64,000 nt of DNA from positions 166,740-230,739 of the IMG/VR virus record IMGVR_UViG_3300020438_000007, one strand, 5' to 3'. Position 1 is the first letter of the stretch. Each line of letters opens with the position of its first letter. Below, in pieces: positions 206 through 13,508 of this stretch. The translations under genes were made by a program, and so were the position numbers. The notes below the pieces were generated by a model. It searched no databases. It saw nothing but the letters and a program-made list of their open reading frames with translations, and had not been told where the DNA came from.

Positions 206-232
206 GTTTGTTTGTTTGTTTGTTATACTATT

Positions 233-290: not shown

Positions 291-291
291 A

Positions 292-692: not shown

Positions 693-715
693 AGTTGTTT
701 GTTTGTTATACTACT

Positions 716-773: not shown

Positions 774-1004
774 ACTATTCATAAACTGAGCAGGTCTCTT
801 TGTATTACATGTAACAGCATAATTCATATCAAGTAAAATATCAATTTCTTCCGCCATGTTAAACACGTTGATTGCTTCATTTTCGACTGTCTTACCTTTA
901 TAGGTAACCACCTTCAATCTAGTAAGGTTACTAACTTTATTTTGTCCATCTTTGACTTCATAATAGTCAACAACTGTGTTTAGGTTATCAGATTGAAATT
1001 GCAT
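732..1004 (-). CDS. hypothetical early protein
   Basis: 90-aa ORF after promoter module 3. Confidence 0.7.
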   Translation of the reverse strand: MQFQSDNLNTVVDYYEVKDGQNKVSNLTRLKVVTYKGKTVENEAINVFNMAEEIDILLDMNYAVTCNTKRPAQFMNSRTIAKVAQSRTKF

Positions 1005-1029
1005 GATGTTCTTTGTTTGTTATACTATC

Positions 1030-1087
1030 ATTATAGGGCACTGATATGCAATAACAACACTTAGTGTGCCACTAATCAAACTGGCAC
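1030..1087 (-). promoter_or_regulatory. early promoter module 3
   Basis: TATAAT 1030-1035; palindrome GTGCCA-CTAATCAAAC-TGGCAC 1066-1087. Confidence 0.8.
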
Positions 1088-1104
1088 ACTGTTGGTTGAT
1101 TATA

Positions 1105-1377
1105 TCACCAATCTGGGGTAGGTTGCTTTGCCTGTGCTTTTTCGACCTTATCATAGTATTTGTCAACTGAACCCTCTAAGATTTCAAAGATAGTATCAAC
1201 TTCATTTACATAATCATCAAATGGTTCTAATAATTGACCTTTAACTCTGTCCGCTCTGTAATGCTCACTCTTTTTAACACTATCCTCAAGTGAGCATAGG
1301 ATAACACCTATTTGTGCTTCGGTTAGTGTGACTTTGTATAGTGTATTATTCATGGATCCAGTTTCCTTGCTCATCAT
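1105..1377 (-). CDS. hypothetical early protein
   Basis: ORF track; true start may be the internal MNNTLY. Confidence 0.65.
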   Translation of the reverse strand: MMSKETGSMNNTLYKVTLTEAQIGVILCSLEDSVKKSEHYRADRVKGQLLEPFDDYVNEVDTIFEILEGSVDKYYDKVEKAQAKQPTPDW

Positions 1378-1636
1378 AATCTCCTTCAGTAATAGATTCT
1401 AATCCATATGGATCACTATCAATAACGACTGATTGTAAACCTTTATAATCACGTCCCTGTAAACGATAGACTTCTTTCTGTTGTCTCATATCTCGATCGA
1501 GTCTATAACATAATTCTGCATTTAGTGCCATTAATTGACGTTTATCATCACTATGTTCAGAATAATGAAAGTTCATACACTCTAACATGTATTCAAGTTC
1601 AATAATAGTAAATTTCATTTTAGTAGTCTCCTCCAT
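1346..1636 (-). CDS. hypothetical early protein
   Basis: 96-aa ORF in a tightly packed minus-strand run. Confidence 0.65.
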   Translation of the reverse strand: MEETTKMKFTIIELEYMLECMNFHYSEHSDDKRQLMALNAELCYRLDRDMRQQKEVYRLQGRDYKGLQSVVIDSDPYGLESITEGDYDEQGNWIHE

Positions 1637-1796
1637 ATATTTCTTCCATCAACTCATCATAAAGTTTCTTTAGTTTAGTTGCTGTAATACTCTTTGCTTT
1701 ATCATTAATTTTCTCTTCTGTCTTATCATCAAAATTCTTAGCAAGATCTTTGATCTCTTTGATGTAATAACGACAGTCTGATCTTGTTATGGTCAT
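1620..1796 (-). CDS. hypothetical 58-aa early protein (MTITRSDCRYYIKE...)
   Basis: Manually translated; follows promoter module 4 and an AAAC leader. Confidence 0.65.
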   Translation of the reverse strand: MTITRSDCRYYIKEIKDLAKNFDDKTEEKINDKAKSITATKLKKLYDELMEEIYGGDY

Positions 1797-1821
1797 AGAT
1801 TTGTTTGTTTGTTATACTACT

Positions 1822-1879
1822 ATTATAGTAGCATGAGATTCAATAACAACCACGACTATGCCAGTAATTAAACTGGCAC
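1822..1879 (-). promoter_or_regulatory. early promoter module 4
   Basis: TATAAT 1822-1827; ATGCCA-GTAATTAAAC-TGGCAC 1858-1879. Confidence 0.8.
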
Positions 1880-2038
1880 ATCATAGGTTGATTTATTTTT
1901 AAGAACATGCCAATATTCTTCATAAGATAGAGTTTCTTCTTTATCTGTATCGGTATTGAGTACAATATCAAAAGGATAAAAAGCATAATATCTCATATGA
2001 TCATCAACATACTCTTTGATTTGTTTATACTTAGTCAT
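1868..2038 (-). CDS. hypothetical early protein
   Basis: ORF track 1868..2089; likely start MTKYKQ at 2038. Confidence 0.6.
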   Translation of the reverse strand: MTKYKQIKEYVDDHMRYYAFYPFDIVLNTDTDKEETLSYEEYWHVLKNKSTYDVPV

Positions 2039-2318
2039 CAGAACACCCCTTGATAACGCTTTGTATAGTATCGGTAAAATCCTCATCAAAGAATTCTTCG
2101 ATCTCTACCATAGCATCATTAAATGAATGGTCATCTATCCATTTTTGCATATCTTGAGCAACATATACAACTAAATCCTCGACTGACATTCCATCAACGA
2201 CTCGATCGATATAACGCTCTTTAAGAGCATTGAATTGTTTGTCTGTTAGTTTTGTTTTGTTCATAGTGTTAATCATGGATGATAGAATCAAAAATTGTGT
2301 CATCATTAGGGAACTCAT
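2031..2318 (-). CDS. hypothetical acidic early protein
   Basis: ORF track; likely start at the internal MNKTKL. Confidence 0.65.
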   Translation of the reverse strand: MSSLMMTQFLILSSMINTMNKTKLTDKQFNALKERYIDRVVDGMSVEDLVVYVAQDMQKWIDDHSFNDAMVEIEEFFDEDFTDTIQSVIKGCSDD

Positions 2319-2472
2319 TTACCTTAGCAATTGCTGCTGCGGCAACCATGTTCCAGACCTTTTGTCCTGACATTTTCTGATCTTGACAATGGAAAGCAAC
2401 TGTATCCTCTAAGAGTTCAAGCACTTCCATTGACTCATTAAAGAGTTTTTCGTATTCTACAGGGTTCATCAT
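2269..2472 (-). CDS. hypothetical early protein
   Basis: 67-aa ORF, overlaps the stop of the upstream gene. Confidence 0.65.
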   Translation of the reverse strand: MMNPVEYEKLFNESMEVLELLEDTVAFHCQDQKMSGQKVWNMVAAAAIAKVNEFPNDDTIFDSIIHD

Positions 2473-2702
2473 ACAGTCCTCACGAATAGTTTTGAAATGC
2501 GATCGTCAATTTCATTGACTCTCTCATAAACTGATCTGCCTTCGATCAATTCATCTTCTTGCATACTGTCATCATCATAACAACGATAATCTTCAAGTGC
2601 ATTTGAGATAGTGTCCCATTCTCCATCAGTGAAGAATGAGCGAATTGTTTGCAGTTGGTCAAAAGAGAAGTCTCTAACCAGTGATCCTTGACGATTCATC
2701 AT
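2469..2702 (-). CDS. hypothetical acidic early protein
   Basis: 77-aa ORF after promoter module 5. Confidence 0.7.
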   Translation of the reverse strand: MMNRQGSLVRDFSFDQLQTIRSFFTDGEWDTISNALEDYRCYDDDSMQEDELIEGRSVYERVNEIDDRISKLFVRTV

Positions 2703-2728
2703 AAAGTTTGTTTGTTTGTTATGTACTT

Positions 2729-2786
2729 ATTATAGGGCAGTGACTCAAAGAATCAACCACCCTTGTGCCAGTTTGTCTACTGGTCT
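2729..2786 (-). promoter_or_regulatory. early promoter module 5
   Basis: TATAAT 2729-2734; GTGCCA-GTTTGTCTAC-TGGTCT 2765-2786. Confidence 0.75.
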
Positions 2787-3079
2787 AATGCCCATAGACT
2801 TCCACCATCAAAATCGGTAGGGTATCCATAGTTTCTAACTAACATATCTCTAACTCTTTCTCTGTCAAGTGAATCACCATCGCCCCAAGTGAATCTATCA
2901 TTATCCAAATCAGATATCACTTGTAAGTAATCTTCCGTAGCAAGTGTAATGTCACCTTTAGTAACATTCATTTGATAAAGTGCATCATCAGCACCATAGA
3001 ATGAAAAGACATAATCAATAAACTCATCAAGTTGATTGATGTCATATTTTGATTTTCCGATAGCAACGATAGAAGTCAT
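2777..3079 (-). CDS. hypothetical early protein (WGDGDSLDRERVRD motif)
   Basis: 100-aa ORF after promoter module 6. Confidence 0.7.
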   Translation of the reverse strand: MTSIVAIGKSKYDINQLDEFIDYVFSFYGADDALYQMNVTKGDITLATEDYLQVISDLDNDRFTWGDGDSLDRERVRDMLVRNYGYPTDFDGGSLWALDQ

Positions 3080-3104
3080 AAACCTGTTTGTTTGTTATAC
3101 TATC

Positions 3105-3162
3105 ATTATAGGGCAGTGATATTGAATATCAACCGCCCTTGTGCCACTTATTCAACTGTCAC
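3105..3162 (-). promoter_or_regulatory. early promoter module 6
   Basis: TATAAT 3105-3110; GTGCCA-CTTATTCAAC-TGTCAC 3141-3162. Confidence 0.8.
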
Positions 3163-3346
3163 TAGGTACAACCATTTGTGGGATTCCATCTTGAATATCC
3201 GCTAAGTGTCCTAGTTTATGACGAATTTTCCTAAAATTAACGTCAAAATCATCGCTCAACTTGTCAGTAACCCTACAAGGCGTACCTAAGATAAGTTGAA
3301 GCAGAGCGTCACACTCTGCTGCGGTTAGATTTGGGTCATTCATCAT
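3152..3346 (-). CDS. hypothetical early protein
   Basis: 64-aa ORF coupled to the upstream gene. Confidence 0.6.
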   Translation of the reverse strand: MMNDPNLTAAECDALLQLILGTPCRVTDKLSDDFDVNFRKIRHKLGHLADIQDGIPQMVVPSDS

Positions 3347-3825
3347 GCTACCTCGTATAATTCTTTTGGATAATCAGCAGGGATAGTTTCTTTGATAGGT
3401 TTGAATGTATCGTTGAAATCTTTAGTCTCTTTGTTCCAAAAACTGAGACCATAACACTCTAGAGTTCCGTCAAGTTCCTTGACGTAAGCATACTCTCCAC
3501 AACACTTGTCAGTATCCTCAAAGAAGTGAGAGATAGTTTTGTGAAGTTTAGGAGCATTATCATCCATAGACTCACCTCGCTCTGTATAATAGCAAGGTTT
3601 GTACTCTCTACCTTCTAACTCTTCGGGTTCCTTAAGATCCCAACCTGAGTTAGTATAGCAACAACTCATGTTACCACCATCAATAAGTTCAGCGAATTGG
3701 TCTCTAGTATCATAGTGCTTGTTGAGAGTAACTCCCAACCACTGTGGATAACCATCCCAGTGATGATATACTGAAAGGATTGAACCATCAGCAAGGCGAA
3801 GTCCGATTCTTGAATTTGTTGACAT
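3343..3825 (-). CDS. conserved phage hypothetical protein (SVYHHWDGYP motif)
   Basis: 160-aa ORF; N-terminal TxSRIG...YxHWDGYP pattern recognised from other phages. Confidence 0.8.
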   Translation of the reverse strand: MSTNSRIGLRLADGSILSVYHHWDGYPQWLGVTLNKHYDTRDQFAELIDGGNMSCCYTNSGWDLKEPEELEGREYKPCYYTERGESMDDNAPKLHKTISHFFEDTDKCCGEYAYVKELDGTLECYGLSFWNKETKDFNDTFKPIKETIPADYPKELYEVA

Positions 3826-3852
3826 AGTGTGTTGTTTGTTTGTTATGTACTT

Positions 3853-3910
3853 ATTATAGTGTGGTGGGAATGGAAATCAACCACCTGTGTGCCACTAATC
3901 TAAGTGTCAC
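3853..3910 (-). promoter_or_regulatory. early promoter module 7
   Basis: TATAAT 3853-3858; GTGCCA-CTAATCTAAG-TGTCAC 3889-3910. Confidence 0.8.
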
Positions 3911-4164
3911 AGGTCTGCTGGGTCTGAAGGCATCACCTGTGGTACGATCATCAGTTGTAACCTATCAACGACAGCGGGCACTAGATAACTACCATCAAAA
4001 GAGCAAGTTCCGTCATCATTCTTGTTACCTAACTTCTCACAAATTGCATCACTAACTAACTCATATAAAACGTTATGTTTCCTTGGGTTCTGATAAATGT
4101 GTTCAATAACTTCCAATACCAAAGCATCAGCAAGTTTGTTTAATGTCTCTTTAGATAGAGTCAT
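3907..4164 (-). CDS. hypothetical early protein
   Basis: 85-aa ORF with AGGAGG SD upstream. Confidence 0.7.
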   Translation of the reverse strand: MTLSKETLNKLADALVLEVIEHIYQNPRKHNVLYELVSDAICEKLGNKNDDGTCSFDGSYLVPAVVDRLQLMIVPQVMPSDPADL

Positions 4165-4189
4165 TTAGTCCTCCTTTTTGTTTGTGTGG

Positions 4190-4576
4190 TCATTTTCCAA
4201 TTCCCATAGGGTCATCTGATTCGCTCTCTAATTGAGAGACAATTGCACTATCAATTTTGTCTAGTTCTTCTTGATGAAACTTTCTTGTCCATCCATCATT
4301 GTATGATGAATTTGCATTTACCAAATGGTGTGCTCGGTTTCCAATCAAAACATCATTTTCTTCTCTATAATATTCATAAACAAGTTGTTGATATATGTCA
4401 AACAACTCTTGCAATACTACTCCTTCGAGATCAGTCCATGAACCAACGTAGTCAACTTGTGTCTCATCATATCCGCCCTTCTTGAAACTAGGAGCACTAA
4501 AAAAGTGCATATCTGTGTCTATCATGAAGTGATGACCATACTTCTCACTCTCGTAAGTTTTTACATATGTCCTCAT
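4190..4576 (-). CDS. hypothetical early protein
   Basis: 128-aa ORF, ATGA overlap with the upstream gene. Confidence 0.7.
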   Translation of the reverse strand: MRTYVKTYESEKYGHHFMIDTDMHFFSAPSFKKGGYDETQVDYVGSWTDLEGVVLQELFDIYQQLVYEYYREENDVLIGNRAHHLVNANSSYNDGWTRKFHQEELDKIDSAIVSQLESESDDPMGIGK

Positions 4577-4758
4577 TTTGTACCTCCATCAACTGCTATC
4601 ATTTTGTGGTATATGTCATATGAAATATAATCTCTAATATCATTTGAGAGATCAGGGTCATGCTTTGTTTCTACTCTCTCTTTGAGTGAGAAATAAGTCG
4701 GTTCAAATATCTCAAAGAGTCTATTGAACTCGGTATCTGTTAGGTTTAATGTTTTCAT
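4573..4758 (-). CDS. hypothetical early protein
   Basis: 61-aa ORF, coupled overlaps. Confidence 0.6.
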   Translation of the reverse strand: MKTLNLTDTEFNRLFEIFEPTYFSLKERVETKHDPDLSNDIRDYISYDIYHKMIAVDGGTK

Positions 4759-4970
4759 AGGTCAATAGTATGCTCAAGTTTTAGACGTAATAGTGAGTCA
4801 ACAACCGATTCCATAGTTGTCTTAGAGTAACCAACTGCATAGGGATAATCCTTCTTGTAGTCAGCGGCACTCTGTTCCGAAGCACCATAACATACCTCAA
4901 TTGATTCATTGAGTGACATAATTATTGCATCAATAACGTAGGTCGGGATTTCAAGTTTGGGATCTGGCAT
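4755..4970 (-). CDS. hypothetical early protein
   Basis: 71-aa ORF after promoter module 8. Confidence 0.7.
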   Translation of the reverse strand: MPDPKLEIPTYVIDAIIMSLNESIEVCYGASEQSAADYKKDYPYAVGYSKTTMESVVDSLLRLKLEHTIDL

Positions 4971-4991
4971 TGAATTACCTTATATGTTTAT

Positions 4992-5049
4992 ATTATAGTA
5001 TAATAAAATAGGATTGCAACCACTCATGTGACATTTATTCAACTGGCAC
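4992..5049 (-). promoter_or_regulatory. early promoter module 8
   Basis: TATAAT 4992-4997, TTGCAA 5014-5019; GTGACA-TTTATTCAAC-TGGCAC 5028-5049. Confidence 0.8.
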
Positions 5050-5063
5050 ACCCGATGAAGTGA

Positions 5064-6035
5064 TTAAGAGTTGGTAATCACTTCATCTGGTACGCCCCAT
5101 GTCTTTTTCATGTTAAAGTTTGCATAACTGAAGCGTTGACGTTTGACAAGTTTGTATGTACCATATTTGTTAGTCATCACATAACCCTCATGTTCATAGG
5201 GTTGACCATCAATAAGACACTCTACATCTTGTGACGTAGTGATGCCTTGCATCAATAGTTCTTTAACTTCGATAATCATATTGTACAAGTGGAATAGGTT
5301 TTTTGAATATCCTGTATCACTTGCAAGTTGATCTGGGTTAAGTTTCTTGCCTTCCCTCACATAACTGTTGACGATTACCTTTAGTGTTTTCCCTTCCTTG
5401 AGCGTGGGGAACTCGGTGAATCGTACCAACGTGCGAATAAGAATGAGCAAAAATTCGATCTTTGCATTTAAGCGGTTTGATCGGGCGCCCATACTAGCAT
5501 GAGTATCAACTTGATAGTGTCTCAAGTTGGTACAGTCGAGATTCCCATAGTTATTAGTCCTATAATGGAATACTGCATCTAATTCTTGAATAGTTGCACC
5601 AACATATTCAGTATGAGTCGCTACAACCACTGATTGTTTGATTACTTTATCAAATTTGTAGGTGATTGTGTTAGGTTTGTAAGTATCATTACCACCATAA
5701 CCAATGAAGTCGCACTGATATACCCCATGCTCTGTGGGCAGGGTCTCAAGACAAGTGTGTAGAATACTTGCTACGTTTGGGATGTTCCCATGATTAGTTT
5801 CAATGTCATCATGAGTATAGTTTATCTTGATCTTTTTCTTATTGAATACTGATTTAGTACCAACAAAGAATCTACCATTCTCAGGGTTGACTCCATAGAC
5901 GACAGCGGGGGCACCATCATATTTGACTGATATTTGATTTCTCTTGCTCTTCAGAAACTTGATCACATCAACAGCACCCTCCTTACCAAGGGTCAGGATG
6001 CTGTCCTCTGGGTGTTCTAGGTGTTTGTTCTTCAT
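5064..6035 (-). CDS. putative ATP-dependent ligase-like nucleotidyltransferase (adenylation domain only)
   Basis: Motif I KYDG, motif IV EGYV, motif V-like YKLVKR; start MKNKHLEHPED at 6035 follows promoter module 9. Confidence 0.55.
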   Translation of the reverse strand: MKNKHLEHPEDSILTLGKEGAVDVIKFLKSKRNQISVKYDGAPAVVYGVNPENGRFFVGTKSVFNKKKIKINYTHDDIETNHGNIPNVASILHTCLETLPTEHGVYQCDFIGYGGNDTYKPNTITYKFDKVIKQSVVVATHTEYVGATIQELDAVFHYRTNNYGNLDCTNLRHYQVDTHASMGARSNRLNAKIEFLLILIRTLVRFTEFPTLKEGKTLKVIVNSYVREGKKLNPDQLASDTGYSKNLFHLYNMIIEVKELLMQGITTSQDVECLIDGQPYEHEGYVMTNKYGTYKLVKRQRFSYANFNMKKTWGVPDEVITNS

Positions 6036-6041
6036 ACTACC

Positions 6042-6099
6042 ATTATACACCATGCCAACAGGAAAACAACCCTCTCTGTACCAGTTTGTAGACTGTCAC
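6042..6099 (-). promoter_or_regulatory. early promoter module 9
   Basis: TATAAT 6042-6047; GTACCA-GTTTGTAGAC-TGTCAC 6078-6099. Confidence 0.75.
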
Positions 6100-6404
6100 A
6101 CAAAGAATTGTTCTAGTGGGGTCAAGTTAAGTTTCATTGCAGTATAGGGCGAAGTGTCCTCTATTGAGACTTCTTTACCTATTCTATTTGAATTGATGGG
6201 GGCGTAGTAAGCGTGCGTACTGCTTCTCTTTGTTCTCTTATGCTTGACGAATCCCCAGATACAACGAGATTCATCACCATCATTATAGAGAAACCTATAG
6301 TCAGATACAGTCCAGATAGCATCCACATTAGTTTTAAATTGTATCGACTCATAGCGGTATCCTTTAGGTGGTTGGTGAATAAAATCGTCTGGAAGTGCGG
6401 TCAC
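6096..6404 (-). CDS. conserved cyanophage hypothetical protein
   Basis: 102-aa ORF; F.H..P.GY.YE...CIWGF...YAPINS...TxPYTAM pattern. Confidence 0.75.
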   Translation of the reverse strand: MTALPDDFIHQPPKGYRYESIQFKTNVDAIWTVSDYRFLYNDGDESRCIWGFVKHKRTKRSSTHAYYAPINSNRIGKEVSIEDTSPYTAMKLNLTPLEQFFV

Positions 6405-6490
6405 AATTTATCAGTTAAAAGATTGTGGGAGAGATTCGACTTAAAGAGCATTTTCCACTGGGGTCGCTCACTCTTGCCTCCCACATTTAT

Positions 6491-6548
6491 ATAATAATCC
6501 ATTGGGATAGGATTACAACCAGTAGTGTGCCAGTTTATTATATGTCAC
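6491..6548 (-). promoter_or_regulatory. early promoter module 10
   Basis: -10 TATTAT 6491-6496; GTGCCA-GTTTATTATA-TGTCAC 6527-6548. Confidence 0.7.
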
Positions 6549-6729
6549 ATTCGGGGTTGAGAAATTGTCTATTTCGCTTTACCTTAGTAGTTGAAATATC
6601 AATTAGGTCTTCTAACTCTTCAATAGAATTAGATAGGTTATCATCATCTTTCTCTTCAGAATAGAAAAATAATGCTTCACTTAACAAGTTGAATTGCTTG
6701 TCAGTTAGTGTTACATCGATCTTATACAT
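6538..6729 (-). CDS. hypothetical protein
   Basis: 63-aa ORF. Confidence 0.65.
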   Translation of the reverse strand: MYKIDVTLTDKQFNLLSEALFFYSEEKDDDNLSNSIEELEDLIDISTTKVKRNRQFLNPECDI

Positions 6730-6730
6730 C

Positions 6731-7342
6731 TTACCTCATAGGTATGTTAAATGACATGATTGTCCTCTGTTTATCTGATTTAGATACTGGCGATTCATGT
6801 AACAATACAGAGGGGAAAGTTAGAATCTCACCTTCATTTACTGAAGGCGCAACCTTATCTATTGTACCATAAAAAGGGTTAGGATTAGGACTATAAAATG
6901 TAGTGGGAAAGTGCTCTTCTGCATCAAATTCAACATATAATACACATGATATATTCATTAAACCATGATTGTGGGCACCATGATATTGTCCTCTGTCATA
7001 TCTCTGTGACCATAGTTGCCAATCCTCAATACCTTTGAAAGGGCAATCTCCTCTATATCTATCATTCAATATCTGTGTGTATTCATTAACTAACCTATCT
7101 AAATCAGTTTCCAATATCTCATAAAACTCCATAAGATATGGTGCTGAAGTCTGATACTTATAGTAATCAGTCTGGCACTCATAATCTTGTTTAAAGTAAT
7201 CAAACTCTTGAAGATCATCACCAGTAAAATCCATTAGATTTAAGAGTTTAGATTTCTTGTCACTCCAATCATCTACCACAAACTTAGTGATAGGGAACCC
7301 AAATAGATTTAGAGATTGACCGTTCATTTCTTGTGATTTCAT
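6731..7342 (-). CDS. putative 2OG-Fe(II) oxygenase, TIGR02466-like (HxH type)
   Basis: HGAHNH...SCVLYV...FPSVLLHES...RTIMSFN. Confidence 0.8.
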   Translation of the reverse strand: MKSQEMNGQSLNLFGFPITKFVVDDWSDKKSKLLNLMDFTGDDLQEFDYFKQDYECQTDYYKYQTSAPYLMEFYEILETDLDRLVNEYTQILNDRYRGDCPFKGIEDWQLWSQRYDRGQYHGAHNHGLMNISCVLYVEFDAEEHFPTTFYSPNPNPFYGTIDKVAPSVNEGEILTFPSVLLHESPVSKSDKQRTIMSFNIPMR

Positions 7343-7620
7343 TTTCTGTCTTGAGAACCCTTGCCACCACTAGACCAAAGACCTGTTTTTTCCATAATTC
7401 TGTCCGTCAGGTGTGTTTGGTCATCCATCCCACTCTCGTTATGGAAAAAAGACTAAGTGTCATCCTAGAAGTTCATTTGTGCTTATAGTTCTTTCTTGAT
7501 TTGCGCCTTGGTTTTATACCCTTGTCTCTCTTCAACTCTGCTTTAAGTTTCTTTAGAAATTTCAAGTGATCAGGATACACCAATCTCATCAGATCCTTTT
7601 TAGTCTGTCTCGATTCTTTA

Positions 7621-7887
7621 CTAATCTCTGTCCACCTCAACATCATTTATGTCCTGAAATGTAATGTTTGCGATGTCCGAATCAGTCCAATCTGTGATAT
7701 CATCAAGGAATAAGTCGGTATCATCAAAATCATCTGCCTCGATCATCATTTCCTGTACTAATGCCTCAGCGTCCTCAAGTCGAACTTTATCCACCAAACT
7801 ACTCATCTGTGTGGCGAATTGCTCTTCCATGACTGAAAGGCATTGTGCTCTGATCTTGTCAATTTGTGCCATTGGTTTAATTACCAT
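7621..7887 (-). CDS. highly acidic small protein
   Basis: 88 aa, 24 D/E versus 6 K/R; TTGCAA-17-TATAAT promoter directly upstream. Confidence 0.7.
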   Translation of the reverse strand: MVIKPMAQIDKIRAQCLSVMEEQFATQMSSLVDKVRLEDAEALVQEMMIEADDFDDTDLFLDDITDWTDSDIANITFQDINDVEVDRD

Positions 7888-7924
7888 GTAGTTTAATTAT
7901 ACTATAATGTTAAGTTATTTGCAA

Positions 7925-9157
7925 CTACCTTGTCGCTCTTGATACCTGTGACTCTCCTCTAGTAAAGATAGTGTCAACAACTGATTGAAGGCGACGTTCT
8001 GTACCAATACCCACATTGCTGTAAACTGGTACAAACATCTTGCCAAATGGTTTTACATAACCATTTCCATTGATGTTAGGTTTGAGAGCACCTGTACTAA
8101 TCTTAAGTGCATCTTCCTTATGTAGTCGAATGACTCGACCAATAGTCTGTGCCATGGTGATTAGATCAAGATTCCTCAATAGAATACAAGCAGTCAATCC
8201 GCTCACATTCATACCCTCTGAGAGAATAGAATGATGAAACATGACAAACTTCTTGTCAGGGTCAGCACCCCACTTGTTCATCAAATTGAAGAATGTCTTG
8301 CGAGTGACCTTCTTACCATTGATGATAGCACCATACTTTGATGTAATCCACATTACATTGTATTTCATAGAGTGACATACTGCCATGAAATCAGTTTGAG
8401 TAATCAACTTGTGAATGTTCTTACTAGACTTAGCAGTGACCAATACTTTGTCCATGTGATCTTCATTTTCAAGAGCATCAAGAATCATACACCTGTCAAT
8501 CTGCTCGACTGATTCATAGAACCCGATAGGATACTTGACTGACTTGACTTGAGGCGGTACAATGTAACCCTTTTCAATCAACTCTGGAGCAGCGACTTCT
8601 GCAATAACATTACCATACACCTTGACATTGTTCATACCTCTCTCTTGTGATGTATGATGTTTAGGTGTGGCAGTGAAGTAAAACTTACGTCTGGTAATCT
8701 TAGAGCGATTCTTGACACTCTCAAAGAAGTTCCTTTGAACTGAATTGTGTGCCTCATCATAATATACTGTGTCTGCTTCAACATCTTCTCTGACTTTGTG
8801 AAGTGAGTGATATGTTGTAAAGATCAACTGGTTCCTTGTACTGTTATGATGCCACTCTTGAATCTCTTCTGGGTTAGTAGTAGTCTTATAGTTAGTCTCT
8901 CCACTATGAACATGAAGCACCTCGACATTATCAATGTGCTCTAAGAACTCCTCACACAACTGTTGTGCAAGTAAGATTCTAGGAGCAACAACAATAATAG
9001 TCTGCGGAATAGGCATACTGAATCGCCACTTAGCGTCCATAATCATACATATTGTTTTACCGCCACCTGTGGGTACAAGAACCTGCCCCCACTTGTGTTG
9101 CATGGTATCAATTATGTCTGTTTGATGGTCACGAAGTTGCATAGTCAGTTGTCTCAA
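7925..9157 (-). CDS. superfamily 2 DEAD/DEAH-box helicase (ResIII-like)
   Basis: PTGGGKT, YYDEAH, TATP, SEGMNV, QTIGRVIR. Confidence 0.9.
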   Translation of the reverse strand: MRQLTMQLRDHQTDIIDTMQHKWGQVLVPTGGGKTICMIMDAKWRFSMPIPQTIIVVAPRILLAQQLCEEFLEHIDNVEVLHVHSGETNYKTTTNPEEIQEWHHNSTRNQLIFTTYHSLHKVREDVEADTVYYDEAHNSVQRNFFESVKNRSKITRRKFYFTATPKHHTSQERGMNNVKVYGNVIAEVAAPELIEKGYIVPPQVKSVKYPIGFYESVEQIDRCMILDALENEDHMDKVLVTAKSSKNIHKLITQTDFMAVCHSMKYNVMWITSKYGAIINGKKVTRKTFFNLMNKWGADPDKKFVMFHHSILSEGMNVSGLTACILLRNLDLITMAQTIGRVIRLHKEDALKISTGALKPNINGNGYVKPFGKMFVPVYSNVGIGTERRLQSVVDTIFTRGESQVSRATR

Positions 9158-9164
9158 TACTCAT

Positions 9165-9222
9165 ATTATAGGATAAAAAAAGACCCCTGCATGGGGTCTT
9201 GTGACAGTTTCAGAACTGTGCC
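9165..9222 (-). promoter_or_regulatory. early promoter module 11 with embedded terminator
   Basis: TATAAT 9165-9170; GTGACA-GTTTCAGAAC-TGTGCC 9201-9222. Confidence 0.7.
9174..9200 (-). terminator. intrinsic terminator AAGACCCC-ATGCA-GGGGTCTTTTTTT
   Basis: GC stem followed by a U-run, downstream of ORF 9210..9395. Confidence 0.8.
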
Positions 9223-9395
9223 AATAGTTTTTGAGTCTCAGGATCGAACTCCTCTTTGACTCCATTGATGTCCATCAACCAATCATCTGCCTCAAGTCGT
9301 TCAAACTCTTCGGTTCCAAGTGTCCATTCGGGATCGCCCGAGAACATTTGGGCATTTTCTTCAAACTCTTGTGGGGTCATTGTCTTAATAATCAA
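9210..9395 (-). CDS. hypothetical acidic protein
   Basis: 61-aa ORF (TTG start call; ATG at 9380 also possible). Confidence 0.6.
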   Translation of the reverse strand: MIIKTMTPQEFEENAQMFSGDPEWTLGTEEFERLEADDWLMDINGVKEEFDPETQKLLAQF

Positions 9396-9425
9396 AATTT
9401 ACAAAAAATAATAAACACATCAAAC

Positions 9426-9659
9426 TCAGCAACTTGCAGGCGAGTATTGTTGTGGTTCAGTCAGGAAATCTGTCACCTGATAACCAAGATCGAGACGTGA
9501 ATTGATTGTCTCAGTCATTTCTCTCTTGCTCATCAGTCGCATTGACATAGCATTAACTTCGCCTTGATTGTTCTTCAGTTTGAGAGTATAAACGAATTTC
9601 TCAGTCAAAATGTTGTGAGGGCGGAACTCTACTGACATTGAACCTGATGTGAGTTGCAT
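9426..9659 (-). CDS. hypothetical early protein
   Basis: 77-aa ORF after promoter module 12. Confidence 0.7.
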   Translation of the reverse strand: MQLTSGSMSVEFRPHNILTEKFVYTLKLKNNQGEVNAMSMRLMSKREMTETINSRLDLGYQVTDFLTEPQQYSPASC

Positions 9660-9683
9660 GGGGTCTCTTGTGTTTACTCTCTT

Positions 9684-9741
9684 ATTATAATGGGATCAGA
9701 GTCCCCTGCAACCACCTGTGTGCCAGTTATCCAACTGGTGG
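9684..9741 (-). promoter_or_regulatory. early promoter module 12
   Basis: TATAAT 9684-9689; GTGCCA-GTTATCCAAC-TGGTGG 9720-9741. Confidence 0.75.
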
Positions 9742-10026
9742 TGTGCCTGGTGCCTGAGCAGGCATTGATTCCATATCAAACTTACTAGATGCCTTCTCTA
9801 GTTCTACCTTACCCTTGAGGGCATTGACCTCTGCAATAAGAGTCTTAATATCATCTTGTTGTTTATACAAGGCAGCATTAACCAATGACTCCAATGTAGT
9901 CAATCTCTCATCAAGATTACCAATGGTTCGCATTGATGCTTGTAATTGTTTCTTTAGTCTATCTACTTGTTGCAACTTAGTTTTAGTAAGTGCTTCTGTG
10001 TCTGATGTTAGTGAATCGTATCCCAT
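9727..10026 (-). CDS. coiled-coil hypothetical protein
   Basis: 99-aa heptad-rich ORF; late-type CTAAATA at 10047-10053. Confidence 0.7.
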   Translation of the reverse strand: MGYDSLTSDTEALTKTKLQQVDRLKKQLQASMRTIGNLDERLTTLESLVNAALYKQQDDIKTLIAEVNALKGKVELEKASSKFDMESMPAQAPGTPPVG

Positions 10027-10066
10027 AATTTATGTTACTCTTTGATTATTTAGATAGGTGTGCGTA

Positions 10067-10492
10067 TTACCTGATGTACAGATAACCACCTGCCCAGTCA
10101 CAGTTTGATAGCATCCACTGACGTTGATTGATGTCTCTCATATCAAATCTAACGTGTTTAGCAGGTGCTTTCCATGAAGCAGGTTTGTAAACCTCTCCTG
10201 TCATTTTGTCAACAAAAGCATGAACCCCTGCACTATCATATTTGCCTTGGTGGTAGTCATTCTGAATGATCTTATGATACCTTTTGCCTGATGTTATAGT
10301 AAACCTCATGCACTCTTCATCATTCTCAATTTTGTTAATCCTATCCTGTAGGTATGGATTATTTTCCTCTGAATTATTCTTGATGCAAGAGCGAACTGCG
10401 TAGTTCTTATACTGTTGTTCGAGAGCACGGCAAAGTGTCTCTGTCCATTGAAGTACTTCTACTTTTGTGAGTGATTGTTCTAGTGTTGACAT
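10067..10492 (-). CDS. conserved cyanophage hypothetical protein (VHAFVDKxTGEVYKPASWKAPAK)
   Basis: 141-aa ORF with a motif recognised from T4-like cyanophages. Confidence 0.85.
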   Translation of the reverse strand: MSTLEQSLTKVEVLQWTETLCRALEQQYKNYAVRSCIKNNSEENNPYLQDRINKIENDEECMRFTITSGKRYHKIIQNDYHQGKYDSAGVHAFVDKMTGEVYKPASWKAPAKHVRFDMRDINQRQWMLSNCDWAGGYLYIR

Positions 10493-10518
10493 AATCTTTG
10501 TTTGTATTGTTGTTTGTT

Positions 10519-10566
10519 AAAGAGAAAAGGGGGGAAAGGTAACAAACACAAAACCTTTCCCTCCAC
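10519..10566 (-). ncRNA. candidate hairpin sRNA / attenuator (GGAGGGAAAGGU-UUUGUGUUUGUU-ACCUUUCCCCCC-UUUUCUCUUU)
   Basis: 11 of 12 bp stem, 12-nt loop and U-run, immediately after promoter module 13. Confidence 0.5.
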
Positions 10567-10572
10567 ATTCAT

Positions 10573-10630
10573 ATATTACTGCTTTATGGTGGTAATACAA
10601 CCACCTATGTGCCACTACTTCAACTGTCCA
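10573..10630 (-). promoter_or_regulatory. early promoter module 13
   Basis: Degenerate -10 TAATAT 10573-10578; GTGCCA-CTACTTCAAC-TGTCCA 10609-10630. Confidence 0.65.
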
Positions 10631-10821
10631 CTCTTACCAAGTCTGTGTAGATAGTAACCTATGAGAGCACCAATACCCATCTTAAACAAGGCACTGAAAG
10701 AATTGTCAATTCGATTCAAATTAATATCTGTGCCTGTACCATACTCACTATTCCTCAAATGATAGTGAACAGTTTTGGGTCTGGTTTTCATGGCAATAAT
10801 ATAGTTGGGTGCGAGAAACAA
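10615..10821 (-). CDS. small protein with C-terminal hydrophobic segment
   Basis: ORF track; probable start MKTRPK. Confidence 0.55.
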   Translation of the reverse strand: MFLAPNYIIAMKTRPKTVHYHLRNSEYGTGTDINLNRIDNSFSALFKMGIGALIGYYLHRLGKSGQLK

Positions 10822-10918
10822 AAACGTGGACTTAAACTCATTGACTTCTTTTTACGTTTAGGACTTGCACCTAACCCAATGGATGCCAGTTTTGTTTCCC
10901 ATTATCATTATAGGTCAT

Positions 10919-11644
10919 CTACCTGTCCTTGTCAAGTTCTTGGTTCTCATTGTACTGAGGGTTGCACTCTTCTGTAAATGCTTTCCTTCTCTCTTGTGGT
11001 GTTAGTTGTACCACTCGCCAACCGTAGTCTCCATTAGTGACAATGGTGGGCATCATGTTCATTGATAATGTGACTCTGTTGTCTCCATTATTATGTTGAT
11101 AACCATGTATGACTTGAGCAGGGAAAATCATCAGTTCGCCCTCTTTCACCTGTACTTGATTATCCTGATTGTGGTCTGTAAACTTCTTCCGCATCAATGT
11201 TAGACTAGGCATTACAGGATAGTATAAATTTTCTTCTCTTGTGAAGTGTGTATTTACATGATCTTTTGTAACATCAAAGTTCACATAATATATGCAACTT
11301 AGGTAAGAATTGCTATGAAAGTGTGGATGTTGGTATCCACCCTTGTCGCTTATGTTATACCAACTATCTGTAACTGCTACTGTCTCCTGTATATAATGAC
11401 CTAGAACTTCCTTTGCATAATATTCTCCTTGTTGTTCACACCAATTTTTAAATCTACCATACTTCATATCCTCATGGAGCACAGAGTAATGTCCAAGGTG
11501 CTTTAACGCCTTTGAGTTTGCATTGTAAGATAACTGATTGCTTTTCTGTTCTTCAATGTCATCTAACATATTTTGCTTTACCTTATCATGGAATGGGCAC
11601 TCCACGATAAGAACTGGCGTTGGCAGAATGTTTACTACTTCCAT
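10919..11644 (-). CDS. putative 2OG-Fe(II) oxygenase, TIGR02466-like
   Basis: DSWYN...QHPHFHSNS.LSCIYY...FPAQVIHG...RVTLSMN. Confidence 0.85.
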   Translation of the reverse strand: MEVVNILPTPVLIVECPFHDKVKQNMLDDIEEQKSNQLSYNANSKALKHLGHYSVLHEDMKYGRFKNWCEQQGEYYAKEVLGHYIQETVAVTDSWYNISDKGGYQHPHFHSNSYLSCIYYVNFDVTKDHVNTHFTREENLYYPVMPSLTLMRKKFTDHNQDNQVQVKEGELMIFPAQVIHGYQHNNGDNRVTLSMNMMPTIVTNGDYGWRVVQLTPQERRKAFTEECNPQYNENQELDKDR

Positions 11645-11645
11645 G

Positions 11646-12350
11646 TTATAAATTAGGATAATCCCATAGTTCGCCTGACCTTTGGTTAGTCATGGCATTG
11701 TGTCTCTCTTGTTTGGTCAGAGGTTCAATTCTCACCTCATTCACATATCTAGGCATCAAATTACTTGATACTGTAATTCTATTGTTACTGTAATTAGTTG
11801 CATAACCATGGCAAGTATTAGCAGGCCACAGTAACAACGAACCCTCTAATCCTACCACTTCATTAACATAATTATACTTTGTTTTCTCGTAATTTGTCAA
11901 CATATATGCAAAGTAGTCAGGATTTTTCTGACTATTGTTTGGTCTGTAAAAATATGTTGGAGCGTGGACTTCATCATCAAAGTTGATATAATATAAGGCA
12001 CATATAACGGCATTTATATGAAAATGCGGACTCTGACGACCACCTTCATCACACACATTTAACCAACTATCTGTCAATACAAAATCAGATGTATCATAGT
12101 TAAGTATATCTTTTGCGTATATTTCTGCCTGTAGTTCTATCCACTCCCTAAACTCCTTGTACTTATCTTGAGATAGAGGCGAGTAGTAATCAAGGTGTTC
12201 TAATCTTTTTGCGGGTGCGTCAACCTTTTTATGTTCATAGTCATTACCATGACTATTGATCTCATCAGTAATTAATGACTTTAGTTTCTCATGCTCAGGG
12301 TATAATACTGCTCCTAACTGTAAAGGTAGTATATCAACCACTCTCATCAA
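11646..12350 (-). CDS. putative 2OG-Fe(II) oxygenase, TIGR02466-like
   Basis: DSWLN...QSPHFHINA...WPANTCHG...RITVSSN; tandem paralog of the preceding gene. Confidence 0.85.
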   Translation of the reverse strand: MMRVVDILPLQLGAVLYPEHEKLKSLITDEINSHGNDYEHKKVDAPAKRLEHLDYYSPLSQDKYKEFREWIELQAEIYAKDILNYDTSDFVLTDSWLNVCDEGGRQSPHFHINAVICALYYINFDDEVHAPTYFYRPNNSQKNPDYFAYMLTNYEKTKYNYVNEVVGLEGSLLLWPANTCHGYATNYSNNRITVSSNLMPRYVNEVRIEPLTKQERHNAMTNQRSGELWDYPNL

Positions 12351-12982
12351 CTTTCACCTACACTATTTGGGTGGTTTTCTCCCCAAACTTCCTTTAAAAA
12401 TGATTCAGGCAACATATCTCTAGGAGCAGGCGAAGTGTTGAAACTTACAGTAATTCGTTCCTGATCTGTATTATTAACTCTGCTTCCATGTTCTAACCAA
12501 GAAGGAAATAGGTATAGATGATTTTCTTTAATTGGTATATCCATTTCATATACACCATAACGTGTAGGTTGTATGTTATGAATACACATCATATATGGTT
12601 TGAGTGGCGATACCACGAAAAACTGTCCAAAATCTCCCTCTGGTAACTCAAGATAGAAAGCACCACTTACAACACTAGACTCATGGCGATGTTTATCTGT
12701 GTATCCACCTTTGGGCAGCATATTATACCATGCTCCACTAATAATTGCAGGGTAGTTTCCTATTTTAGCATTATAATCATTCAAACACTCATGAAAAACA
12801 TTTAATATATCATAACAACCCTCATCTTGTAACGGATCCCAACCACCATGAGAACTGACACCATTCACTGCTAAAGAATGTCCATGTGTTTTACCTTGTT
12901 CTTTTATATGTTTTTTAAAATAATCTAAACCAGGCGCCTCTGTTAGATCATATTCTTCCAATAGTGTGGGAAATAAATCCAT
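12347..12982 (-). CDS. putative 2OG-Fe(II) oxygenase, TIGR02466-like
   Basis: AWYN...KHRHESSVVSGAFY...FPSWLEHGS...RITVSFN. Confidence 0.85.
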   Translation of the reverse strand: MDLFPTLLEEYDLTEAPGLDYFKKHIKEQGKTHGHSLAVNGVSSHGGWDPLQDEGCYDILNVFHECLNDYNAKIGNYPAIISGAWYNMLPKGGYTDKHRHESSVVSGAFYLELPEGDFGQFFVVSPLKPYMMCIHNIQPTRYGVYEMDIPIKENHLYLFPSWLEHGSRVNNTDQERITVSFNTSPAPRDMLPESFLKEVWGENHPNSVGES

Positions 12983-12983
12983 A

Positions 12984-13508
12984 TCAATTCCATTTACAAT
13001 AGTCTATGTTGAGAACAACTCTCAGGTCAGCATCAGTACATGACGTACCTGCGTGAAGCAAATCACCTGAGAATATAACTGCCCTATTCTCTTTTGATAC
13101 CACTTTCTGTCCGTCCTCAAAGTATGTATATCCATCATTGTCATTGAAGTATATCACACAAATATGATAGTCTGGTATGTCAGTAAAGTTGCCTTGACTA
13201 TCTTGGGGACCTGATACATCAACGTGTAATGGTTTCTCTTTTATGTTTGTCGTTCTAGGTGTGGCATTGAACTTAATCCTATGCAATGCAAATGGATTAA
13301 TTGTAGCAAATATTGGTTTAATTATACCATAAAGATCTGATATTGGTTCAGAGTCTATGTAACAGGCATGAGTAAATTGTGGGCAACCATCGCCTTCCAT
13401 CACAGAGGTAGGAGAATAGTACCAAGGCATAACCCCACCAAAGATATACTCTTTGATAGGGTTAAAAACCTCAGTAGGTAGGAAGTTATCGTAAACTTCT
13501 ATGCTCAT
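12984..13508 (-). CDS. short 2OG-Fe(II) oxygenase (HxD...H)
   Basis: LHVD...NDNDGYTYF...ENRAVIFSG.LLHAG...RVVLNID. Confidence 0.85.
   Translation of the reverse strand: MSIEVYDNFLPTEVFNPIKEYIFGGVMPWYYSPTSVMEGDGCPQFTHACYIDSEPISDLYGIIKPIFATINPFALHRIKFNATPRTTNIKEKPLHVDVSGPQDSQGNFTDIPDYHICVIYFNDNDGYTYFEDGQKVVSKENRAVIFSGDLLHAGTSCTDADLRVVLNIDYCKWN

What the first reader, a model, noticed from the sequence alone, without database searches (positions are those of the whole stretch)
10511..10578. Candidate ~48-nt hairpin sRNA whose loop is complementary to the early-gene (AAAC)n leaders
Seen: promoter module 13 is followed immediately by a 12-bp stem (one mismatch), the 12-nt loop UUUGUGUUUGUU and a U-run. 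The loop's UGUUUGUU is the exact complement of AACAAACA, present in at least 7 early leaders and also just downstream of the hairpin (10511-10518). Inference, two models: (a) a terminated trans-acting sRNA from an early-type promoter that binds the shared leaders and shuts off early translation as a negative-feedback timer; (b) a cis H-type pseudoknot/attenuator controlling gene 10067..10492. I know of no described phage RNA of this kind.
Basis: partly seen in the sequence, partly recalled or inferred. Interest (0 to 1): 0.75.

Follow-up and report, generated by a model that had tools for sequence, protein, structure and literature searches.

The report
Conserved leader hairpin in cyanophage early operon
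A small RNA hairpin directly behind an early promoter of an S-SSM7-like marine cyanophage is real and under strong selection: its 12-letter loop stays the same while its stem changes freely. It is therefore a new regulatory RNA element, but how it works is not settled.

Summary
On the minus strand, 10564-10529 folds into a 12-bp stem with one A.C mismatch and the loop UUUGUGUUUGUU. A U-rich tract and the AACAAACA box follow, ahead of the DUF7717 gene (10067-10492).

The window is a T4-like cyanomyovirus, 84% identical to Synechococcus phage S-SSM7. In loci fetched through the protein, every member of one well-supported DUF7717 clade has the hairpin, once per contig. The loop is invariant, apart from one G-to-A change in one lineage. 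The stem covaries, and in one subclade it is a different sequence altogether. G-U pairs fit only the sense RNA, and no reading frame is conserved. Rfam has no match.

Metatranscriptome contigs run through the hairpin without loss of depth, so it is at most a leaky terminator and is part of the mRNA leader.

The cis pseudoknot partner is missing in about half of the second stem type. Loop-to-leader duplexes are weak (about -8 kcal/mol) and no better than those of composition-matched shuffled loops.

My best reading (0.4) is a promoter-proximal attenuator-like leader RNA whose loop pairs with the ACAAACA box of early leaders, in cis and possibly in trans. A protein operator is the main rival (0.3). 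It is a new variant of a known kind.

The parts
10609..10631 (-). Upstream motif of the repeated early-promoter cassette (GTGGACAG..AGTGGCAC). Here it is degenerate and overlaps the stop codon TAG (10617-10615) of the upstream ORF.
   Evidence: Repeat families D1, D3 and D5; sequence read.
10595..10600 (-). -35-like hexamer TTGTAT. It reads TTGCAT, TTGCCT or TTGACA in relatives.
   Evidence: It is kept at the same place in all variants, but it is a weak match and was not listed.
10573..10578 (-). -10-like hexamer TAATAT, after a 16-nt spacer. It reads TATTAT or TATAAT in relatives. The predicted start is near 10566-10568.
   Evidence: Inferred only; no 5' ends were mapped.
10553..10564 (-). 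5' arm of the stem. It is all purine (GGAGGGAAAGGU).
   Evidence: Fold; covariation.
10541..10552 (-). 12-nt loop UUUGUGUUUGUU, the invariant part.
   Evidence: Identical in all protein-anchored hairpin loci except one lineage with G4 changed to A. Occurs once in the genome.
10529..10540 (-). 3' arm of the stem. It is pyrimidine apart from its first base (ACCUUUCCCCCC).
   Evidence: A strain in run X5 has one extra C here.
10519..10528 (-). U-rich tract UUUUCUCUUU.
   Evidence: Present after the stem in nearly all variants and absent in the L018/L028 group.
10511..10518 (-). AACAAACA box, complementary to loop positions 5-12.
   Evidence: It lies 21-23 nt after the loop in all type 1 variants.
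10490..10510 (-). Rest of the CA-rich leader and the ATG (10492-10490).
10067..10492 (-). First gene of the unit: DUF7717 protein, 141 aa (T4-like gene cluster 68).
   Evidence: Pfam PF24835, E = 9.6e-39. S-SSM7 annotation. AlphaFold model with pLDDT 94.9 and no known fold.
10907..10935 (-). Upstream consensus promoter (TTGACA, 17 nt, TATAAT), whose transcripts also cross the hairpin.
   Evidence: RNA contigs of runs X1 and X2 end at 10900/10901, the predicted start.

Best explanation
The element is a sense-strand RNA stem-loop. It makes up roughly the first 50 nt of the transcript from an early, sigma-70-type promoter, and it heads the transcription unit that begins with the DUF7717 gene in S-SSM7-like cyanomyoviruses. 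The stem is only a scaffold: it covaries, and one subclade has a different sequence. The selected part is the GU-rich 12-nt loop. A U-rich tract follows the stem.

I read it as a leaky, promoter-proximal attenuator-like leader element. Its loop would act as an antisense seed for the ACAAACA box that begins the short leaders of this phage's early mRNAs. Pairing would cover the ribosome-loading region. In type 1 phages the partner can be the unit's own leader, 21-23 nt downstream. Where that box is absent, and perhaps everywhere, the partners would be other early leaders. These could be reached either by the read-through mRNA or by a short RNA ended at the U tract.

Shown: the hairpin, its position, the invariant loop, the stem covariation, its non-coding nature, one copy per genome, the complementarity, and read-through in natural RNA.

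Inferred: the transcription start, any termination, the pairing itself, and its effect on translation or stability.
For: - Loop conservation: the loop is identical in all members of one DUF7717 clade (SH-aLRT 99), down to about 46% protein identity. There are two unrelated stem sequences.
- Stem covariation: 93.9% of cells are paired, 7 of 12 pairs show changes on both sides, 0 of 500 shuffles reach this, and slid registers reach at most 69%. RNAalifold agrees.
- Strand: there are 18 G-U cells against a single A.C cell in the pairs that share one register in both stem types, so the sense RNA is the folded strand.
- Not coding: the ATG at the stem foot is out of frame here and in frame in S-SSM7, and in several type 2 variants it is followed at once by TAA.
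- Flanks: a promoter lies directly upstream and a U tract directly downstream in almost all variants.
- Complementarity: the loop is complementary to AACAAACA (positions 5-12), ACAAACAC (4-11) and CAAACACAA (2-10). All three occur in leaders of hairpin-bearing phages. Several registers together would constrain nearly the whole loop.
- Box position: the box starts 9-10 nt after the -10 of the other early promoters, so it sits at the 5' end of early mRNAs and inside the ribosome footprint.
- The one loop change: G4 to A in L086/L087 turns a G.U into an A-U with that phage's own leader, AACAAACAU.
- Tie to the unit's 5' end: in L100 and L111 another gene sits between the hairpin and DUF7717, so the hairpin belongs to the 5' end of the unit rather than to one ribosome-binding site.
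Against: - The duplexes are weak, -7 to -8.6 kcal/mol for (AAAC)n leaders.
- By energy, the loop finds no more UTR partners in the window than composition-matched shuffled loops do: 12 against a mean of 10 at -8 kcal/mol or better.
- Given 9 U and 3 G, 18% of loop arrangements hold such an 8-mer.
- About half of the type 2 variants have no cis partner.
- ACAAACA leaders also occur in phages without the hairpin, for example L107. The co-occurrence test on sister-clade contigs was inconclusive.
- No short transcript has been shown. RNA contigs cross the hairpin at equal depth: run X2 has 21-37x upstream and 27x downstream.
- Neither partner ever varies, so there is no covariation evidence for the loop-box pairing itself.
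Confidence: 0.4

Rival explanations
1. Protein operator. The 12-nt loop, presented on a stem, is the binding site of a protein. Candidates are the phage translational repressor RegA, the DUF7717 product itself (autoregulation), an unknown antiterminator, or a host S1, Hfq or RRM-type protein. Binding would control termination at the U tract, translation or mRNA stability.
For: - An invariant loop on a variable stem is the signature of known protein-bound phage operators. In the T4/RB69 gene 43 operator the loop is shared between phages (PMC3014915).
- The whole loop is invariant, which is more than the 8 nt that any single pairing register needs.
- regA is encoded in this genome. T4 RegA selects a U/G-containing single-stranded site, aaAAUUGUUAUGUAA (PMC3014915).
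- The element is linked to one transcription unit and occurs once per genome.
- RNA pairing energies are weak.
Against: - There is no positive evidence for any binding protein.
- The DUF7717 model has no recognisable RNA-binding fold: Foldseek against PDB gives E above 0.2 and VIA gives Z of 5 or less.
- Known RegA sites are unstructured and overlap or abut the AUG. This loop lies 33-49 nt upstream of the AUG in both stem types (48 nt in the window).
- In L100 and L111 the first gene after the hairpin is not DUF7717, which weakens simple autoregulation of that gene's translation.
- This reading leaves the complementarity to the leader box as coincidence.
Confidence: 0.3
2. Cis-only H-type pseudoknot or attenuator. 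The loop pairs only with the AACAAACA box of its own leader and tunes expression of the DUF7717 gene.
For: - In all 19 type 1 variants the box lies 21-23 nt after the loop, although the linker sequence changes.
- Three type 2 variants carry CAAACACAA or CAGACACAA at a similar distance.
- The G4-to-A loop variant pairs with its own leader.
- In three variant groups the distance from hairpin to ATG is kept while 55-70 nt are inserted between promoter and hairpin.
Against: - L102, L104, L105, L106, L108 and L117 keep the loop but have no partner above background, -6.5 to -8.6 kcal/mol.
- The same box is conserved in every early leader anyway, so its conservation here is not specific.
- Neither side ever varies, so no covariation supports the second helix.
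Confidence: 0.1
3. Plain structural element. It is an ordinary intrinsic terminator or attenuator, or a 5'-terminal stem-loop that protects the mRNA from 5'-end-dependent RNases, with no loop-specific function.
For: - A stable G+C-rich stem is followed by a U tract, directly after the predicted start.
- The sister clade L095-L098 keeps the basal stem and the U tract but has a different apical part, so the stem plus U tract has value of its own.
- 5' stem-loops stabilise bacterial mRNAs (established knowledge, not tested here).
Against: - It cannot explain an invariant 12-nt loop across two unrelated stems.
- The loop is longer than the 3-8 nt of usual terminators, and the terminator scan did not list it.
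- RNA contigs read through.
- Three variant groups carry 55-70 nt between promoter and hairpin, so the hairpin is not always 5'-terminal.
Confidence: 0.08
4. DNA-level element or coding sequence. It would be a cruciform or a protein-binding site in DNA, a leader peptide, or the N-terminus of the DUF7717 protein as annotated in S-SSM7.
For: - S-SSM7 gene SSSM7_041 is annotated from the ATG at the stem foot.
- In several variants that ATG opens a short frame that reads the loop as Leu-Cys-Leu (sequences).
Against: - The frame is broken by single-pair indels in the stem. It is out of frame with the gene in the window and is closed at once by TAA in several type 2 variants.
- Full nucleotide invariance with no synonymous change is not a coding pattern.
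- G-U pairs occur on the sense strand only, which argues against a duplex-DNA or cruciform role.
Confidence: 0.03

Closest known systems
T4-type translational operators in 5' leaders: the gene 43 hairpin and the gene 32 pseudoknot followed by an unstructured tract (Uzan and Miller 2010, PMC3014915)
   Same: Both are structured RNAs in the 5' leader of an early gene of a T4-like phage. In the gene 43 operator the loop is shared between phages while the stem differs. In gene 32 a structure lies about 67 nt upstream of the AUG and is followed by an unstructured leader.
   Different: No binding protein is known here. The loop is 12 nt and GU-rich. The element sits directly behind a promoter and is followed by a U tract. 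The gene is DUF7717, not a replication protein. There is no sequence similarity.
Attenuator- or riboswitch-derived small RNAs that also act in trans (Listeria SreA/SreB, Sinorhizobium rnTrpL; from memory, not checked here)
   Same: A promoter-proximal hairpin with a U tract in a 5' leader could yield both a short RNA and a read-through mRNA. The conserved single-stranded part could serve as a seed.
   Different: The short species is not shown here. No ligand or leader peptide is evident. The seed would lie in the terminator loop itself.
Lambdoid nut boxB / N and HK022 put antitermination RNAs (from memory)
   Same: These are promoter-proximal RNA hairpins in early operons, and the loop is the recognised part.
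   Different: boxB has a 5-nt GNRA-like loop and is not itself followed by a U tract. No N-like protein or boxA is known in T4-like cyanophages. None of this was tested here.
PeSL cassettes, promoter-early stem-loops of T4-like phages (Arbiol 2010, PMC2839356; Comeau 2014, PMC4122927)
   Same: The hairpin lies inside one of at least 13 repeated early-promoter cassettes, of the kind described as PeSLs.
   Different: The PeSL stem-loop lies upstream of the promoter and is repeated many times. This hairpin lies downstream of the promoter, occurs once per genome, and has a conserved loop.
Loop-seeded antisense RNAs with YUNR U-turn loops (CopA, RNA I, Sok; from memory)
   Same: A single hairpin has a seed in its loop, and the loop contains two UUUG (YUNR-type) motifs.
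   Different: Those RNAs are cis-encoded antisense RNAs with long full complementarity. Here the match is only 8-9 nt, to a shared leader box.

Membership tests
Intrinsic (Rho-independent) terminator | Stable G+C-rich stem | tested here: met
   -16.8 kcal/mol, z = -3.3. Stems are 11-15 bp in all variants.
Intrinsic (Rho-independent) terminator | Short loop, usually 3-8 nt | tested here: not met
   The loop is 12 nt in every variant, and the terminator scan did not list the site.
Intrinsic (Rho-independent) terminator | U tract directly after the stem | tested here: met
   UUUUCUCUUU here and U5-U9 in most relatives. It is absent in the L018/L028 group, which has UACCAUUUAC.
Intrinsic (Rho-independent) terminator | Transcripts end there | tested here: inconclusive
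   RNA contigs of X2 and X5 cross the site at equal depth. X3 has a 17-nt hole just 3' of the U tract at low depth. These are contigs, not reads, so 3' ends cannot be seen.
Trans-acting small RNA | Own promoter and a discrete short transcript | not testable with these tools
   A promoter-like -35/-10 is conserved. No small-RNA or end-mapping data could be laid on the window; only contigs were available.
Trans-acting small RNA | Conserved seed complementary to several targets | tested here: inconclusive
   The seed is invariant and has an 8-nt perfect match to 9 leaders in the window. The energies are weak and not enriched over shuffled loops.
H-type pseudoknot in cis | A second helix partner downstream in all members | tested here: not met
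   Present in all type 1 variants and in 3-5 of 11 type 2 variants. Absent in L102, L104-106, L108 and L117.
T4-type autogenous translational operator | Hairpin with a conserved loop in the leader of the regulated gene | tested here: met
T4-type autogenous translational operator | Bound by the protein encoded downstream, with the site next to the ribosome-binding site | not testable with these tools
The DUF7717 fold is uninformative. The stem ends 19-45 nt before the AUG. In L100 and L111 another gene intervenes.
PeSL cassette | Stem-loop upstream of an early promoter, repeated through hyperplastic regions | tested here: not met
   This hairpin is downstream of the promoter and single-copy. 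The surrounding cassette does fit the PeSL description.
Any Rfam 15 family | Match to a curated covariance model | tested here: not met
   No match at 10500-10600, even at E up to 10.

The most novel reading that the evidence does not exclude
The hairpin is released as an RNA of about 48 nt that works as an anti-leader. Its loop would pair with the AACAAACA box at the 5' end of about a dozen early mRNAs of the same phage. It would either shut off their translation together as a timer, or shield them from host RNases. That would be a virus-encoded riboregulator aimed at a leader motif shared by its own early genes.
Probability: 0.2. Interest if true: 0.85.

Novelty: new variant of a known kind. 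Interest (0 to 1): 0.6.

Why it matters
Marine T4-like cyanophages kill a large share of the ocean's picocyanobacteria, yet almost nothing is known about how they control gene expression after transcription. This is a clean, comparatively supported RNA motif that is not in Rfam. It has an invariant 12-nt loop, free stem covariation and one copy per genome, and it sits at the head of an early transcription unit.

It gives a concrete handle for experiments, because S-SSM7 and its host Synechococcus WH8109 are in culture. If the loop pairs with the box shared by early leaders, it would show a new way for a phage to coordinate its early genes. If a protein binds it, it would identify a new operator-repressor or antiterminator pair in a group that lacks the T4 MotA/AsiA system (from memory, not checked here).

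It also corrects the annotated start of S-SSM7 gene 041.

Tried and rejected
- Rfam scan of 9000-12000 at E up to 10: nothing at the hairpin.
- Leader peptide or N-terminal extension: rejected. The frame is not conserved, there are stem indels, and several variants read ATG-TAA.
- Function of DUF7717 from structure: the model is confident, but there is no fold match in PDB, AFDB clusters or the wide VIA search. A Z of 4.0 to the T4 MotA C-terminal domain is at noise level. The ESM Atlas gives only DUF7717 clusters.
- Hairpin upstream of the homologues in P-SSM5, P-RSM3, ACG-2014e, S-RSM4, S-RIM4, Syn9, P-TIM68 and Syn19: absent.
- Covariance model R1 searched over 68 sources (214 kb): one copy per hairpin-bearing contig and nothing elsewhere. 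One marginal hit in L161 at E = 0.08.
- Energy-based search for trans targets: no enrichment over shuffled loops.
- Does the GU loop co-occur with ACAAACA leaders? The box is clustered in the S-SSM7 early region but dispersed in Syn9, P-SSM5, S-RSM4 and Syn19. Sister-clade contigs have few boxes but cover other genome parts. Inconclusive.
- Is AACAAACA better conserved in this leader than in others? No. It is kept in all orthologous early leaders between this phage and S-SSM7.
- Loop as a mimic of a 16S rRNA segment: not tested, because no host rRNA sequence could be obtained.
- Literature search for cyanophage leader RNAs found nothing relevant. One further search failed on a term format.
It was rerun without them.
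- The exact 18-mer scan is biased toward the loop by design. Conservation claims rest on the protein-anchored sets.

Full report
**What is there**

The window belongs to a T4-like cyanomyovirus. Its closest isolate is Synechococcus phage S-SSM7, 83.6% identical over 9450-13000. The window is the last 64 kb of a 230,739-base virus record. Genes around the finding lie on the minus strand.

Read on that strand, the order of elements is:
- the stop codon of a small upstream ORF, inside the degenerate upstream motif of a repeated early-promoter cassette (10631-10609);
- TTGTAT (10600-10595), 16 nt, TAATAT (10578-10573);
- eight nucleotides;
- the stem-loop 10564-10529, with a 12-nt 5' arm, a 12-nt loop UUUGUGUUUGUU and a 12-nt 3' arm with one A.C mismatch;
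- UUUUCUCUUU (10528-10519);
- AACAAACA (10518-10511);
- a CA-rich leader;
- the ATG at 10492 of a 141-aa DUF7717 protein.

The isolated 50-nt hairpin is more stable than all 200 shuffles, z = -3.3. The 101-nt context is not unusual. AACAAACA is over-represented, 25 copies against 5.6 expected, and on the sense strand it lies in 9 leaders. The loop 12-mer is unique in the genome.

**Comparative evidence**

I fetched relatives through the downstream protein, so that the sample did not depend on the hairpin sequence. There were 19 IMG/VR loci from the single protein and 80 from a protein alignment.

On a tree of 56 DUF7717 proteins, all hairpin-bearing loci fall in one clade of 19 rows with SH-aLRT support of 99. 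Two rows first scored as lacking the hairpin, L100 and L111, do have it further upstream. Every member of the clade therefore carries it.

The stem comes in two types.
- Type 1 (this window, S-SSM7 and others) has variants of GGAGGGAAAGGU paired with ACCUUUCCCCCC.
- Type 2 (46-56% protein identity to the window) has a quite different stem, for example GUGGAGAGAGGG paired with CCUCUGCUCCAC, or the AUGUAAGAGAGAGGG form.

Both types carry exactly the same loop. The only loop change seen is G4 to A in L086 and L087.

On an alignment of 29 distinct variants, the stem statistics are:
- 93.9% of stem cells form pairs;
- 7 of 12 pairs have changes on both sides;
- no shuffle in 500 reaches the observed pairing or covariation score;
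- slid registers reach at most 69%.

RNAalifold finds the same helix. One base pair is gained or lost as a pair between this window and S-SSM7. In the pairs that share one register in both stem types there are 18 G-U cells against a single A.C cell, so the folded strand is the sense strand.

The ATG at the foot of the stem opens no conserved frame. It is out of frame with the gene here and in frame in S-SSM7, where it was annotated as the start of SSSM7_041. In several type 2 variants it is followed at once by TAA.

An exact scan of IMG/VR for the 18-mer around the loop returned 52 loci. 42 were upstream of a DUF7717 gene and the other 10 were unrelated chance matches. A covariance model built from the alignment finds one copy per contig and none elsewhere in 214 kb. 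Rfam has no match.

Homologues in Syn9, S-RSM4, Syn19, P-SSM5, P-RSM3, P-TIM68, S-RIM4 and ACG-2014e have no such hairpin. The sister clade (L095-L098) keeps a similar basal stem and a U-rich tract, but has a different 45-50-nt apical part.

**Position within the transcription unit**

A -35/-10 pair lies directly upstream in all variants, ranging from a weak match here to a perfect TTGACA-17-TATAAT in L114. The stem usually begins about 4-8 nt after the -10, which is at the predicted RNA 5' end.

In three variant groups, 55-70 nt of other structured sequence lie between promoter and hairpin, while the distance from hairpin to the ATG stays the same. A U-rich tract follows the stem in nearly all variants. 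The L018/L028 group is the exception.

In L100 and L111 an extra ORF of roughly 95 codons lies between the hairpin and DUF7717. The hairpin therefore belongs to the head of the transcription unit rather than to one ribosome-binding site.

**Transcript evidence**

Only assembled contigs of marine metatranscriptomes could be laid on the window.
- In X2, one contig of depth 27 runs from 9616 to 10586, across the gene, leader, hairpin and -10. Contigs upstream have depth 21-37.
- In X5, one contig runs from 10061 to 10812.
- Coverage in X1 and X2 stops at 10900/10901. That is the start predicted for the perfect promoter at 10935-10907, which argues that this is RNA and that transcripts from that promoter cross the hairpin.
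- In X3, two contigs leave a 17-nt hole (10506-10522) just after the U tract. At 5-8x depth and with strain variants present, this cannot be interpreted.

The hairpin is therefore at most a leaky terminator. The conserved downstream gene has no promoter of its own beyond it, so the hairpin must be part of that gene's mRNA leader. A 48-nt species would not be seen in such libraries.

**The loop and the leader box**

In the other early cassettes the AACAAACA box begins 9-10 nt after the -10. That places it at the very 5' end of early mRNAs and 6-18 nt before the AUG. Contigs of type 2 phages also carry ACAAACA(C) in early leaders. In S-SSM7 the box is clustered in the early region at 42-52 kb.

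The loop is complementary to AACAAACA (positions 5-12), ACAAACAC (4-11) and CAAACACAA (2-10). Several registers together would constrain almost the whole loop. The single natural loop change creates an A-U pair with its own leader.

Several results count against pairing.
- The duplexes are weak, -7 to -8.6 kcal/mol for the (AAAC)n leaders.
- By energy, the loop finds no more UTR partners than shuffled loops of the same composition.
- 18% of arrangements of 9 U and 3 G contain such an 8-mer, although the unconditional chance is about 5e-4.
- About half of the type 2 variants have no cis partner above background, so a cis pseudoknot cannot be the general reason for the invariant loop.
- The box in this leader is no better conserved than in other early leaders.

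**Candidate protein partners**

regA is present in the genome. T4 RegA selects a single-stranded, U/G-containing site, but natural RegA sites are unstructured and lie at the AUG (PMC3014915).

The DUF7717 protein gives a confident AlphaFold model, pLDDT 94.9. It has a long N-terminal helix, a five-stranded sheet and a C-terminal helix. No fold match is informative, so autoregulation can be neither supported nor excluded.

**Verdict**

The element is a real, selected, non-coding sense-strand RNA, specific to one clade of cyanomyoviruses and absent from Rfam.

The best-supported description is a promoter-proximal, attenuator-like leader stem-loop whose loop is a sequence-specific recognition element. 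I commit, at 0.4, to recognition by base pairing with the ACAAACA box of early leaders, in cis where the box is present and possibly in trans.

The rivals are:
- a protein operator, 0.3;
- a cis-only pseudoknot, 0.1;
- a plain terminator or stabiliser, 0.08;
- a coding or DNA-level role, 0.03.

The closest known analogues are the T4 gene 43 and gene 32 leader operators and attenuator-derived small RNAs (from memory). The surrounding repeated cassette corresponds to the PeSLs of T4-like phages, but the hairpin itself is not a PeSL stem-loop.

Noticed in passing
window 200-10630, minus strand (for example 3085-3162): At least 13 copies of an early-promoter cassette of about 78 nt. Each has a stem-loop GTGCCAGT-N6-ACTGGCAC, a -35 TTGAYA and a -10 TATAAT. 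The AACAAACA box then starts 9-10 nt after the -10, at the 5' end of the early mRNAs. Between this phage and S-SSM7 the box is kept while the rest of each leader varies. This fits the PeSL cassettes of T4-like phages.
   Followed up: partly
L001:2528-2606 (S-SSM7 gene SSSM7_041): The annotated start is the ATG at the foot of the hairpin, which adds 26 codons that read through the stem-loop. In the window the same ATG (10568) is out of frame. The true start is most likely the downstream ATG.
   Followed up: yes
L018:1380-1440, L028, L041, L086, L087: Three variant groups carry 55-70 nt of extra, apparently structured RNA (for example GGGG...CCCC) between the -10 and the hairpin. The L018/L028 group also lacks the U tract.
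   Followed up: no
L096:465-570, L097:480-560, L095: The sister clade of DUF7717 genes has the same kind of basal stem (GUGGAGG paired with CCUCUCCAC) and a U-rich tract behind the promoter. Its apical part is a different 45-50-nt structure without the GU loop.
   Followed up: partly
L100:248-600, L111:251-600: An extra ORF of roughly 95 codons (starting MNPI...) lies between the hairpin and the DUF7717 gene. L100 shows a further stem variant.
   Followed up: partly
window 10789-10901, minus strand: A 110-nt leader follows a perfect TTGACA-17-TATAAT promoter (10935-10907). It contains a block GUUUUUGUUUCUCGCACCC shared with S-SSM7, L100 and L111. RNA contigs of two runs start at 10900/10901. 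The fold is not unusual, z = -1.2.
   Followed up: partly
window 10528-10534: A strain in metatranscriptome run X5 has one extra C in the C-run of the 3' arm, seen as an insertion behind 10528.
   Followed up: no
window 9564 and 9616: RNA contigs of runs X3 and X2 end inside gene 9426-9659 at two different places, but with the same unmatched letters CTTTGTGT(T) on the + strand. This is unexplained.
   Followed up: no
window 10067-10492 (DUF7717 protein): The AlphaFold model is very confident (pLDDT 94.9): a long helix, a five-stranded sheet with conserved Lys, Arg and aromatic residues, and a C-terminal helix. No known fold matches. The family is found in 343 phage records, nearly all cyanophages.
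   Followed up: partly
window 9180-9200, minus strand: A textbook intrinsic terminator, with an 8-bp stem, a 5-nt loop and U5. It shows what ordinary terminators of this phage look like, in contrast to the hairpin studied.
   Followed up: no
window 10919-12982, minus strand: Three tandem 2OG-Fe(II) oxygenase genes, then an endonuclease V gene and an HNH endonuclease gene, as in S-SSM7.
   Followed up: no
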